Assembly: GCF_963676685.1 (NCBI RefSeq)
Contig: NC_092353.1
Location: 4,526,001 to 4,590,000 of the forward strand
Length of the DNA: 64,000 nucleotides
Direction: 5' to 3'
Source: Mytilus edulis
Taxonomy: Eukaryota
Shown here: in pieces, positions 15,401-17,794 of the stretch
Numbering within the stretch: the stretch's first letter is position 1
Layout: every line of letters begins with the position of its first letter
Program-made: the position numbers and the translations under genes
Notes under the pieces: generated by a model
What the model was told of the DNA's origin: nothing
The model's input: only the letters and a program-made list of their open reading frames with translations
Databases searched by the model: none

Positions 15401-17794
15401 CTTGATATGGTCCTCTCAGGTACACAGTTTAAATCACCTGTAACCGGAGAGCTCGAATTTCATTACAAAATTACTTGTCTCCACCGGGACTCGAACCCGG
15501 GACCTCTGTGTTACAAGGCAGCGCGCTAACCGACTGAGCTAAAGAAGTACTTCCTTAGCTCAACCGCTTACGGCTGACTAAGTATCTACAAAATGTTCTA
15601 AGGGAAGCAATCCCGTCACACTCCCCCCACCTCAAGAGTCATCATACCATTATGACTCTCACACAAACATACCCTAGCTAGAATTCCTCTCTAACTACCG
15701 TGGGTTTTTTAGTTGGGCGCCAATGTAACCGGAGAGCACGAATTTCATTACAAAATTACTTGTCTCCACCGGGACTCGAACCCGGGACCTCTGTGTTACA
15801 AGGCAGCGCGCTAACCGACTGAGCTAAAGAAGTACTTCCTTAGCTCAACCGCTTACGGCTGACTAAGTATCTACAAAATGTTCTAAGGGAAGCAATCCCG
15901 TCACACTCCCCCCACCTCAAGAGTCATCATACCATTATGACTCTCACACAAACATACCCTAGCTAGAATTCCTCTCTAACTACCGTGGGTTTTTTAGTTG
16001 GGCGCCAATGTAACCGGAGAGCACGAATTTCATTACAAAATTACTTGTCTCCACCGGGACTCGAACCCGGGACCTCTGTGTTACAAGGCAGCGCGCTAAC
16101 CGACTGAGCTAAAGAAGTACTTCCTTAGCTCAACCGCTTACGGCTGACTAAGTATCTACAAAATGTTCTAAGGGAAGCAATCCCGTCACACACCAATTAT
16201 TGTCAGGTATCTATTGTCCATCTATTGTCCCTGTCAATCAATACAGCTCACTTCAATTATTATCTGTGGGGAAGTTCTCAAACCTGTTTCCAAACTTAGT
16301 TTATTTTGGCATTTCCTGGAGGAACGAAAAAAAGTGCACTGCAAAATCCTGGTAAGTTTCTATTTTTCTAAAACATTAAACATATTTGAAATTTATTTGT
16401 CTAGGGCATGATATGCCTTAAAACTTTTCCAGAGACTTCCCGAGGAAAATGATCCATTTTTGCACTTCAAGAAAATAAAAAGTCTAAAATGGAACTACCT
16501 TTAGAAACAGAAATTTCTTTTCAACCAAATACAAGATTTACCAATACCACAATCTGATTTGCAGGATGAACAGGAAGAAAACGTTATGGAAACGCATGGA
16601 GAACATTTTTTAGATACTGATAATTCACCGGAGTTGTATGAACTTTTACCGGCAGTTATCCAAACCCTTAAGAATGAAGGGGAAATGGACTCTTACGTGA
16701 AGTTCAATAGGCTTCTGGACGGGAATAAACTGCCTCTAAAATATATTGCATTCTTGTTATTTAAGGATGTTGTTTCGTGGTATTCGTTGGACGACTCTCA
16801 TAAAATGCGTTATTCCCCGGAGGTGAAACAGTTTTGGCGAATAGGCCTCAAACTTTTTAAGGGAAGGTTTCTGAGATTTATGTGTGGCATGAAAAATCAA
16901 GGTCAAGATATCCAGAGACATTTGAATCCCGAAGATTCAGCAATTAACTTTGCAGTACCAGATCGTAAATCATTATGGATGGCTTTGGTGTGTTCTAGAT
17001 CTGTTAGGGAGGATTTTGATGACACAACTAGTTGGCACACAGAACACTCATAGGTGGTTTTCTCCTCTTTGCTTCTATGGCAGGTATTGTGATGTTGAAG
17101 TAAAGATTTCTTGTATTGGTATGTTGCATTACAAATACTGCACCTTTCCTTAAGTGCAGTATCATGAGATGCAAGGTGACCCTTGTAGTTCCAAAGGGTA
17201 GCAAACCCCTTTTGGCAAACGTAACACTGATATCTAAACACCTTCTCGTGTATTGTTTTTACATGTAGTGAGAGTCCGTAAGTAGTTTTGTACATTTCCC
17301 ACAAATGCTGCAAAGTTGTGTTTTTGGTGTTATTTCATGTCCAGGAGATGGATGTTAACTATCCATGTGGCGTGTCAAGTTTCTTTTGTAGTTGCTTGAA
17401 AACTGACAAACGTTGCATTTAAACTCATTTTGATTTTCTGTCTCCACTTCAATCGTTACAAGCGATTCATCAATTCCTTCTATTTCGAAAGATTCATCCA
17501 TGGTCAATTTCTTAAATTTGAAAGAAACGAAACTTTATTTTCCTTGCATGGTTTTGTGTTGTGAAATAAAATATGTAGGTATGATGTTTTGCGTTTCAAG
17601 AAGATTGAAATTATGATATAAAATCCATCTTTAAAGTTTCAATAATCTTGATTGTCATCTAGGTAAATTAGGTGCACTATGCACTCCTGTTTACATGTTA
17701 AACGTTTGTTCATTGTTGAAGACCATAACGGTGGAAATGTGAAGTTTGCCGCTGTCAATGTCATATTCAAGCGCTGTATATGTAAAGCACAATA

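What the first reader, a model, noticed from the sequence alone, without database searches (positions are those of the whole stretch)
15435..16194. Tandem-array miniature LTR retrotransposon whose LTRs carry a tRNA-derived Pol III promoter
Seen: what looks like a 285-bp tRNA tandem repeat is LTR-int-LTR-int-LTR, with TG...CA LTR ends, an 11-nt tRNA-Lys PBS, a PPT, a clean CACC TSD and intact A/B boxes mid-LTR. I see only one substitution among the three LTRs (GAGCTCG vs GAGCACG), so the insertion is very young. Established: plant Cassandra TRIMs carry 5S-derived Pol III promoters and form tandem arrays; as I recall, a tRNA-bearing counterpart with 4-bp TSDs in animals has been named Helenus (TRIMp3). 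Inference: this is a SINE/LTR hybrid that could be transcribed by Pol III and mobilised in trans by a Gypsy-type partner using the same primer. The sense strand has TTTT runs, so full-length Pol III read-through needs explaining.
Basis: partly seen in the sequence, partly recalled or inferred. Interest (0 to 1): 0.85.

Follow-up and report, generated by a model that had tools for sequence, protein, structure and literature searches.

The report
Three-LTR copy of mussel Helenus TRIM
This is a very young three-LTR copy of Helenus-1, an already published miniature LTR retrotransposon of Mytilus mussels with a tRNA-derived promoter in its LTRs; public RNA reads add a discrete sense RNA starting where RNA polymerase III should start.

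Summary
Observation confirmed. Window 15439-16190 (sense strand is -) reads LTR(182)-internal(103)-LTR-internal-LTR between CACC target-site duplications. It has TG..CA ends, an 11-nt tRNA-Lys primer site, a polypurine tract, and a degenerate tRNA-like module with intact A and B boxes in each LTR. The three LTRs differ at one base.

Interpretation supported, but not new. LTR and internal region match Helenus-1_MyGa and Helenus-1_MyCo of Mytilus (Kojima 2024, PMC10886601). Published sizes for Helenus-1_MyCo are 182/102/466 bp with a 4-bp TSD; this copy gives 182/103/467/4. The 1.37-Gb genome holds at least 600-700 LTR candidates as solo, two-LTR and multi-LTR copies, and 17 of the first 21 have perfect 4-bp TSDs.

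- Three stranded RNA runs show an abundant discrete RNA of about 229 nt. Its 5' end is at LTR position 68, 12 nt upstream of the A box. It reads through the conserved T4 and ends 10-11 nt into the next LTR. U3 is covered at only 4-8%.
- At least three other arrays each lie inside one TSD pair. One is a Helenus-1/Helenus-3 chimera, which points to template switching before integration.

No autonomous partner was identified.

The parts
15435..15438 (.). Target-site duplication CACC, on the 3' side of the element in sense orientation
   Evidence: Read directly; script check of flanks
15439..15620 (-). 3'-most LTR (182 bp); carries the single derived substitution at 15453
   Evidence: Homology to other copies starts exactly at 15439 in nearly all hits
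15621..15723 (-). Internal region b (103 bp): primer site 15712-15722, 9-bp hairpin, polypurine tract 15621-15633
   Evidence: sequence read directly
15724..15905 (-). Middle LTR. Landmarks: RNA 5' end at 15838 (LTR 68), A box 15815-15826, B box 15772-15782, conserved T4 15752-15755, RNA 3' ends at 15895/15896 (LTR 11/10)
15906..16008 (-). Internal region a (103 bp): primer site 15997-16007, polypurine tract 15906-15918
16009..16190 (-). 5' LTR (182 bp), identical to the middle LTR
16191..16194 (.). Target-site duplication CACC, on the 5' side of the element in sense orientation
15476..15548 (-). tRNA-like module of the 3'-most LTR. The same module lies at 15761-15833 and 16046-16118. Thr-like anticodon position, mispaired acceptor stem
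   Evidence: Rfam RF00005, 26.7 bits, E 0.004, below gathering score 29; ARAGORN finds none

Best explanation
The stretch is one insertion of Helenus-1, a non-autonomous terminal-repeat retrotransposon in miniature (TRIM) of Mytilus mussels. Its LTRs carry a tRNA-derived RNA polymerase III promoter. This copy is present as LTR-internal-LTR-internal-LTR.

Shown:
- It is a dispersed LTR element with TG..CA ends, an 11-nt primer site complementary to the 3' end of the host tRNA-Lys, a polypurine tract and 4-bp target-site duplications.
- It belongs to the published Helenus-1 family.
- The family is recently active, because many two-LTR copies have identical LTRs.
- In RNA runs of a species carrying the family, one strand yields an abundant discrete RNA of about 229 nt. 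It runs from LTR position 68 through the tRNA-like module, the T4 at LTR 151-154, the primer site, the internal region and the polypurine tract, and ends 10-11 nt into the next LTR.

Inferred:
- The RNA is sense and made by Pol III from the A/B-box promoter. Position 68 is a G 12 nt upstream of the A box and 5 nt upstream of the tRNA-like start, which is where a type-2 promoter initiates.
- The LTR would then divide into U3 = 1-67, R from 68 to about the conserved T4 at 151-154, and U5 up to 182. The T4 would be a leaky terminator.
- The major 229-nt RNA has no terminal redundancy and lacks LTR 12-67, so it cannot be the replicative template. The rarer read-through RNA, seen as 4-8% depth over U3, would be the template.
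- A Gypsy-type partner supplies reverse transcriptase and an integrase that makes 4-bp duplications.
- The three-LTR form arose in one of two ways. Reverse transcriptase may have switched templates and made a concatenated cDNA before integration, which a chimeric sister array supports. Or unequal LTR-LTR exchange at the site followed a normal insertion. For this particular copy the two cannot be told apart.
For: Structure.

Family identity: 12-15-nt words of this LTR and internal region hit only the Mytilus Helenus-1 entries in DataS1 of PMC10886601. The entries read align by eye at roughly 95% to both LTR and internal region. Table S1 gives Helenus-1_MyCo as 182/102/466 bp with TSD 4.

Dispersal: at least 672 first-look LTR candidates in the genome. 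17 of 21 top loci have perfect 4-bp TSDs, as solo, two-LTR and multi-LTR forms.

Host primer: at least 20 copies of a tRNA-Lys-like 3' end ...CCCCACGTTGGGCG in the genome.

Promoter: tRNA match. A box present in 49 of 55 LTR copies, B box in 46 of 55, conserved T4 in 51 of 55.

RNA: 921, 2810 and 2522 reads in runs X21-X23, more than 98% on one strand. There is an 'end' peak at 15838 and 'begin' peaks at 15895/15896, with Illumina adapters abutting both. The permutation joint 15956->15672 is seen in 298, 1112 and 1169 reads. The depth profile is that of a 229-nt molecule read from both ends, and depth over 15842-15891 is only 4-8% of the rest.

Array origin: arrays L032 (4 LTRs, TSD ATAA), L057 (TSD CTAT) and L060 (TSD ATTA) each lie inside one TSD pair. 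L060 reads Helenus-1 LTR, then Helenus-3 internal region and LTR, then Helenus-1 internal region and LTR.
Against: Sense orientation of the RNA rests on the usual convention that the first mate is antisense. The kit is not on record.

The RNA runs carry a species label (organism A) that differs from that of the best DNA holders of this window (organism B), so this particular locus is not shown to be transcribed.

No test of Pol III dependence was made. The RNA's 3' end has no T-run, so it is not a canonical Pol III terminator. The expected roughly 87-nt product ending at the T4 would be lost from these libraries and was not seen.

A random-primed run (X24) gave only 48 reads, mostly joined to other sequence.

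No autonomous partner was found.

Identity to the published consensus was judged from word look-ups and by eye, not with an aligner, because the supplement's sequences have no reference in the tools.
Confidence: 0.9

Rival explanations
1. The three-LTR array formed in place. A normal two-LTR Helenus inserted at CACC, and unequal exchange between the 5' LTR of one chromatid or homologue and the 3' LTR of the other then added one internal-plus-LTR unit. This rivals only the template-switching route within the best explanation.
For: The units are identical and one TSD pair is kept, as this route predicts. All three LTRs share a private variant, TTTT at LTR 28-31, so they come from one source copy. 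Solo LTRs with TSDs, the reciprocal kind of product, are common. The route is proposed for Cassandra and BARE1 arrays (PMC7215508).
Against: Template switching predicts the same picture. The chimeric Helenus-1/Helenus-3 array L060 inside one TSD pair cannot come from sister-chromatid exchange, so the other route operates at least sometimes. At least 7 arrays among about 45 loci is a high rate for 182-bp repeats.
Confidence: 0.45
2. The replicative RNA is not a Pol III product. Full-length RNA with U3-R comes from Pol II, either from host read-through or from a cryptic U3 promoter, and the tRNA-like promoter only makes a dead-end small RNA.
For: The major RNA lacks terminal redundancy and LTR 12-67. 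The T4 at LTR 151-154 should stop Pol III. In run X24 most reads continue into unrelated sequence, as read-through transcripts would.
Against: Across copies the 5' leader, the A box and the T4 are the best-conserved parts of the LTR, and across bivalve Helenus families the A/B boxes are conserved (PMC10886601). That points to selection on the promoter for propagation. Sense-strand depth over U3 is 5-8 times the antisense depth. All Helenus families stay short, as expected under Pol III processivity.
Confidence: 0.2
3. It is a genuine tRNA gene cluster or a local satellite, not a mobile element.
For: A 285-bp tandem period and a tRNA-like match in every unit.
Against: ARAGORN finds no tRNA, and the Rfam score is below the gathering threshold with a mispaired acceptor stem. 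Hundreds of dispersed copies have exact boundaries and different 4-bp TSDs. The primer site and polypurine tract sit exactly at the LTR junctions.
Confidence: 0.01
4. It is a tRNA-derived SINE mobilised by a LINE.
For: A tRNA-derived Pol III promoter, short length and high copy number.
Against: There is no A-rich or LINE-like tail. The unit has terminal direct repeats with TG..CA ends, a primer site and a polypurine tract. The TSDs are a fixed 4 bp. Solo-LTR and two-LTR forms exist.
Confidence: 0.01

Closest known systems
Helenus-1_MyCo and Helenus-1_MyGa / Helenus-1B_MyGa (Mytilus coruscus and M. galloprovincialis; Kojima 2024, Biology 13:119, PMC10886601)
   Same: The same 182-183-bp LTR with the same termini, tRNA-like module and T4. 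The internal region is of the MyCo type (102 vs 103 bp). The tRNA-Lys primer site plus the extension TAAAAAACCCACGG, the hairpin and the polypurine tract are the same, as is the 4-bp TSD. The 480-488-bp copies in this genome fit the MyGa and 1B types.
   Different: About 5% sequence divergence, judged by eye. This copy has a private TTTT at LTR 28-31. The three-LTR form is not described for the Mytilus families in the paper.
LTR-11_DR and other fish Helenus (Kojima 2024)
   Same: A TRIM with a tRNA-like LTR and 4-bp TSD. The paper states that tandem arrays of LTR-11_DR are observed.
   Different: Unrelated LTR sequence, a different primer tRNA (His, Leu or Lys in vertebrate families), and a much higher copy number.
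Cassandra (plant TRIM with a 5S-derived Pol III promoter; Kalendar et al. 2008, cited from my own knowledge; Kalendar et al. 2020, PMC7215508)
   Same: A Pol III promoter and terminator inside the LTRs, and tandem LTR-internal arrays for which both unequal exchange and template switching are proposed. Transcription has been shown.
   Different: A 5S-derived rather than tRNA-derived module, 5-bp TSDs, plants only. No sequence relationship.
Complex three-LTR elements formed by template switching (Sabot and Schulman 2007, PMC1950507)
   Same: LTR-internal-LTR-internal-LTR inside one TSD pair, including fusions of two different parent elements. The chimeric array L060 is of this kind.
   Different: Described for large autonomous plant elements, not for a 467-bp Pol III-type TRIM.

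Membership tests
TRIM (terminal-repeat retrotransposon in miniature) | Two or more short LTRs in direct orientation with TG..CA ends, around a short non-coding internal region | tested here: met
   LTRs of 182 bp and an internal region of 103 bp with no room for an ORF; ends TGTGAC...GGTTACA
TRIM (terminal-repeat retrotransposon in miniature) | Primer-binding site next to the 5' LTR and polypurine tract next to the 3' LTR | tested here: met
   TGGCGCCCAAC lies 1 nt after each upstream LTR and is complementary to the host tRNA-Lys 3' end ...GTTGGGCG plus CCA. GAGGTGGGGGGAG abuts each downstream LTR.
TRIM (terminal-repeat retrotransposon in miniature) | Dispersed copies with target-site duplications, and solo LTRs | tested here: met
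   At least 672 candidates; 17 of 21 loci have a perfect 4-bp TSD; 7 of those 21 are solo LTRs
Helenus (TRIMp3 with a tRNA-derived LTR; Kojima 2024) | tRNA-like sequence in the LTR with conserved A box (TRGCY..YGG) and B box (GGTTC) | tested here: met
   Rfam tRNA 26.7 bits, E 0.004. TAGCTCAGTCGG and GGTTCGAGTCC are present, in 49 and 46 of 55 copies.
Helenus (TRIMp3 with a tRNA-derived LTR; Kojima 2024) | Animal members make 4-bp TSDs | tested here: met
   Table S1 lists 4 for all Mytilus families
Helenus (TRIMp3 with a tRNA-derived LTR; Kojima 2024) | Sequence similarity to a published family consensus (Helenus-1_MyGa or Helenus-1_MyCo) | tested here: met
   Word look-ups in DataS1 hit only these entries, and the sequences read side by side. 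No aligner score, because the supplement sequences could not be passed to a tool.
Helenus (TRIMp3 with a tRNA-derived LTR; Kojima 2024) | Functional Pol III promoter. The paper expects this but says it is unvalidated. | tested here: inconclusive
   A discrete RNA 5' end lies 12 nt upstream of the A box in three stranded runs. Polymerase dependence and strandedness of the kit were not tested.
Helenus (TRIMp3 with a tRNA-derived LTR; Kojima 2024) | Mobilised by a Gypsy-type autonomous element that uses the same primer | tested here: inconclusive
   Other Lys-primed LTR elements exist. One family has Helenus-3-like termini but nothing else in common and no recognisable gag in the 1.5 kb read. Further genome sequence could not be fetched.
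Cassandra / Ajax (5S-derived TRIMp3) | 5S rRNA-derived module in the LTR | tested here: not met
   Rfam search of the region at E up to 1 finds only tRNA
tRNA gene | Cloverleaf that passes tRNA gene finders | tested here: not met
   ARAGORN finds none. Rfam score is below gathering, with non-canonical acceptor and anticodon-stem pairs.

The most novel reading that the evidence does not exclude
The dominant Helenus transcript is not a genomic RNA. It is a precisely ended RNA of about 229 nt (LTR 68-182, internal region, then 10-11 nt of the next LTR) with no terminal redundancy. Its 3' end sits at the foot of a stem formed by the LTR's terminal inverted repeats. It could be a processed product with a role of its own, for instance a decoy or carrier for the partner's Gag and reverse transcriptase that holds the primer site, hairpin and polypurine tract. 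It could also be a template for a non-canonical strand transfer. In either case, Pol III-type TRIMs would solve the 'same terminator in both LTRs' problem differently from retroviruses.
Probability: 0.15. Interest if true: 0.6.

Novelty: already known. Interest (0 to 1): 0.33.

Why it matters
The element itself needs no new name. It should be annotated as Helenus-1 so that its three tRNA-like modules are not counted as tRNA genes or as a satellite.

Two side results have some value. First, Kojima 2024 states that a working Pol III promoter in Helenus is unproven. Public reads now show a discrete RNA whose 5' end lies where that promoter should fire, which makes the question directly testable in mussels. 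Second, a chimeric Helenus-1/Helenus-3 array inside one target-site duplication is natural evidence that multi-LTR TRIM arrays can be assembled during reverse transcription and not only by recombination in the chromosome.

Tried and rejected
1. tRNA gene array or satellite: rejected.

2. SINE: rejected on structure.

3. Ribozyme-bearing retrozyme: Rfam at E up to 1 finds no ribozyme, and no circular junction appears among the read joints.

4. Partner hunt by primer site plus its conserved extension, outside a Helenus LTR: no hits. The 23-mer occurs 16 times, all in Helenus. One pattern was badly designed and only re-found Helenus.

5. Partner hunt by ...GTTACA plus a Lys primer site with a non-Helenus continuation: 12 places in two main families.
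   - Family F2 (L078, L085, L087) has an LTR of about 1.3 kb with Helenus-3-like termini.
   - It shows no further similarity to Helenus, and its ORFs after the primer site have no Pfam match.
   - It may be non-autonomous or unrelated.

Their coding capacity is therefore unknown.

7. Hairpin plus polypurine tract followed by a non-Helenus LTR start: one place, C9:27405305, which could not be read.

8. Whole-RNA fold: not more stable than shuffles (z -0.74). Only the local stems are worth noting.

9. Empty-site haplotig in the assembly: none; the flank is single-copy.

10. Earlier scan notes gave no partner lead.
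Full report
**What is there**

Window 15439-16190 is a 285-bp unit repeated 2.6 times. On the - strand, which is the sense strand, it reads 5' LTR (16190-16009), internal region (16008-15906), middle LTR (15905-15724), internal region (15723-15621), 3' LTR (15620-15439).

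- LTRs are 182 bp and internal regions 103 bp.
- The two internal regions and the first two LTRs are identical.
- The 3' LTR has one derived substitution at 15453.
- CACC flanks both ends.
- LTR ends are TGTGAC...GGTTACA.
- One base after each upstream LTR lies TGGCGCCCAAC. It is found nowhere else in the window.
- That motif is complementary to ...GTTGGGCG plus CCA. The genome carries at least 20 tandem copies of a tRNA-Lys-like gene end GGTTCGAGCCCCACGTTGGGCG.
- GAGGTGGGGGGAG abuts each downstream LTR, preceded by a 9-bp hairpin (GAGAGTCAT / ATGACTCTT).

Each LTR holds a tRNA-like module at LTR 73-145. It scores 26.7 bits against Rfam tRNA (E 0.004), below the gathering score, with a mispaired acceptor stem. 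ARAGORN calls nothing. The A box (LTR 80-91) and B box (LTR 124-134) are intact.

**It is a mobile family, not a local repeat**

The 1.37-Gb genome has at least 14 chromosome-scale contigs and gives at least 672 first-look candidates for the LTR.

- Among the 21 distinct best loci there are solo LTRs, two-LTR elements of 460-488 bp and arrays. 17 of the 21 have a perfect 4-bp TSD, each of different sequence.
- Homology between copies starts exactly at 15439.
- Many two-LTR copies have 100% identical LTRs, so the family has been active recently.

**It is a published family**

Kojima 2024 (PMC10886601) defined Helenus as TRIMs with a tRNA-like sequence in the LTR. Animal members make 4-bp TSDs. 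Helenus is grouped with Cassandra and Ajax as TRIMp3.

- The paper lists Mytilus galloprovincialis and M. coruscus among the hosts.
- Words of 12-15 nt from this LTR and internal region hit only Helenus-1_MyGa, Helenus-1B_MyGa and Helenus-1_MyCo in its sequence supplement.
- Read side by side, the LTR matches both MyGa and MyCo, and the internal region matches Helenus-1_MyCo, at roughly 95% by eye.
- Table S1 gives Helenus-1_MyCo as LTR 182, internal 102, total 466, TSD 4. This element has 182/103/467/4.
- The paper assigns these families to tRNA-Lys priming, reports tandem arrays for the fish family LTR-11_DR, and says seven bivalve families look tRNA-Thr-like. That fits the UGU at the anticodon position here.

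The host is presumably a Mytilus-type mussel. The session did not name it.

**Transcription**

I laid four raw RNA runs on a permuted single unit, window 15672-15956, which is the 3' half of the internal region, the whole middle LTR and the 5' half of the internal region. The runs carry a species label coded organism A. The best DNA holders of this window are coded organism B.

In three runs of one study (2x151 nt):

- 921, 2810 and 2522 reads lay on the unit out of about 8 million records read per run.
- More than 98% had the first mate on the + strand.
- Molecule ends pile up at 15838, and molecule starts at 15895 and 15896. Illumina adapters directly abut both positions.
- The permutation joint is crossed by 298 to 1169 reads.
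- Depth doubles exactly where two 151-nt mates of a 229-nt molecule would overlap.
- Depth over 15842-15891 (LTR 15-64) is only 4-8% of the rest.

In most stranded kits the first mate is antisense, so the RNA is sense. It would then start at G68 of the LTR, 12 nt upstream of the A box and 5 nt upstream of the tRNA-like start. That is where a type-2 Pol III promoter initiates (established knowledge of tRNA-type promoters).

The RNA runs through the T4 at LTR 151-154, the primer site, the internal region and the polypurine tract, and ends at position 10 or 11 of the next LTR. Loose ends show that the MyGa-type internal region and Helenus-3 LTRs are expressed in the same way.

The fourth run, random-primed and from another study, gave only 48 reads, mostly joined to other sequence.

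Kojima states that Pol III promoter function in Helenus is unvalidated. I found no later paper on it.

**Reading of the RNA**

- The TTTT at LTR 28-31 is private to this copy (3 of 55 LTRs).
- The TTTT at LTR 151-154 is the best-conserved stretch of the LTR (51 of 55) and recurs in other mytilid families.
- The reads show that the T4 at 151-154 is read through by the molecules these libraries capture. A product of about 87 nt stopping there would be lost to size selection.

The 229-nt RNA lacks LTR 12-67 and has no terminal repeat, so it cannot regenerate an LTR. I infer the following:

- The minor U3-containing sense RNA is the template.
- R runs from LTR 68 to about the T4.
- The conserved T4 serves as a leaky terminator that is passed in the 5' LTR and used in the 3' LTR.

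The 3' end of the major RNA has no T-run. It lies just past a 10-bp stem that pairs the end of one LTR (UCCGGUUACA) with the start of the next (UGUGACGGGA). That stem appears in the centroid fold. Trimming back to the stem or a structure-guided cut are possible explanations, and this is unresolved. The fold as a whole is not special (z -0.74).

**Origin of the array**

At least six other multi-LTR arrays are present. Three of them lie inside one intact TSD pair:

- L032: four LTRs, TSD ATAA.
- L057: three LTRs, TSD CTAT.
- L060: three LTRs, TSD ATTA.

L060 is chimeric. It reads Helenus-1 LTR, then a Helenus-3-type internal region and LTR, then a Helenus-1 internal region and LTR. The junctions fall in the U5-end and primer-site stretch that the two families share.

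Exchange between sister chromatids cannot make this, and exchange between different loci would break the TSD. A reverse transcriptase switching between co-packaged RNAs can make it, as proposed for complex plant elements and for Cassandra arrays (PMC1950507; PMC7215508).

For the window's own array the units are identical and share a private variant. Template switching and later unequal exchange both fit.

**Partner**

No element outside Helenus carries the primer site with its conserved extension.

Twelve other Lys-primed LTR elements end in ...GTTACA. One family (L078, L085, L087) has these features:

- an LTR of about 1.3 kb that starts TGTAGCGGAAT and ends GTCTCCTGTTACA, close to Helenus-3 termini;
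- an 18-nt Lys primer site;
- no other similarity to Helenus;
- no Pfam match in the first 1.5 kb after the primer site.

More sequence could not be fetched. One place, C9:27405305, has the Helenus hairpin and polypurine tract followed by a different LTR start and remains unread. The Gypsy partner is thus still an inference from the 4-bp TSD and from Kojima's comparison.

**Limits**

- Read laying was limited to one call, so I ran no strandedness control and did not test this specific locus.
- The published consensus sequences have no reference in the tools, and I did not type them in. Identity is therefore by word look-up and by eye.
The alignment tool printed its own consensus line for the LTR comparison, and I did not use it.

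**Verdict**

This is a real, very young three-LTR copy of the known Mytilus TRIM Helenus-1. The RNA ends and the chimeric array are modest new observations worth a bench test.

Noticed in passing
L060 (G000:C10:71869831-71870588): A three-LTR array inside one TSD pair (ATTA) is a chimera. It reads Helenus-1 LTR, then Helenus-3-type internal region and LTR, then Helenus-1 internal region and LTR. The switches fall in the shared U5-end and primer-site stretch.
   Followed up: partly
window 15820-15846 (LTR 60-85) and the same place in the other two LTRs: A 26-nt near-palindrome GAGCTAAGGAAGT/ACTTCTTTAGCTC spans the RNA start (G68) and the first half of the A box. Its only mismatch is a G.T pair, which would be a wobble pair in sense RNA only. 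Helenus-3, other bivalve Helenus families and the coelacanth LTR1_LCh consensus show a palindrome at the same place with different central bases. No explanation found.
   Followed up: no
window 15634-15660 and 15919-15945 (internal region 64-90): A 9-bp hairpin lies directly 5' of the polypurine tract. Other bivalve Helenus families (Argopecten, Saccostrea, Pinctada, Mizuhopecten entries) have a hairpin of different sequence at the same place. It may be a signal shared with the partner element.
   Followed up: no
G000:C3:20498009-20519353: At least 20 head-to-tail copies, about 1122 bp apart, of a tRNA-Lys-like gene 3' end (GGTTCGAGCCCCACGTTGGGCG). This looks like a tandem tRNA-Lys gene array and the likely source of the primer.
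   Followed up: no
L079/L080 (G000:C6:47746785 and 47754387, - strand): Two Lys primer sites of another LTR family lie 7.6 kb apart on the same strand, with 99.8% identical surroundings over 3 kb. This could be a tandem LTR-internal-LTR-internal array of a larger element or a segmental duplication.
   Followed up: partly
G000:C9:27405305-27405341: The Helenus hairpin and polypurine tract (GATGACTCTTGAGGTGGGGGAAG) is followed by a different LTR start, TGTTTCAGGATTAT. This is the only such place found. It may be a partner element or a rearranged copy, and it could not be read.
   Followed up: no
L032 (G000:C14:69594445-69595303 and downstream): A four-LTR Helenus-1 array with TSD ATAA. Its last LTR is split by an unrelated insertion of about 650 bp.
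   Followed up: partly
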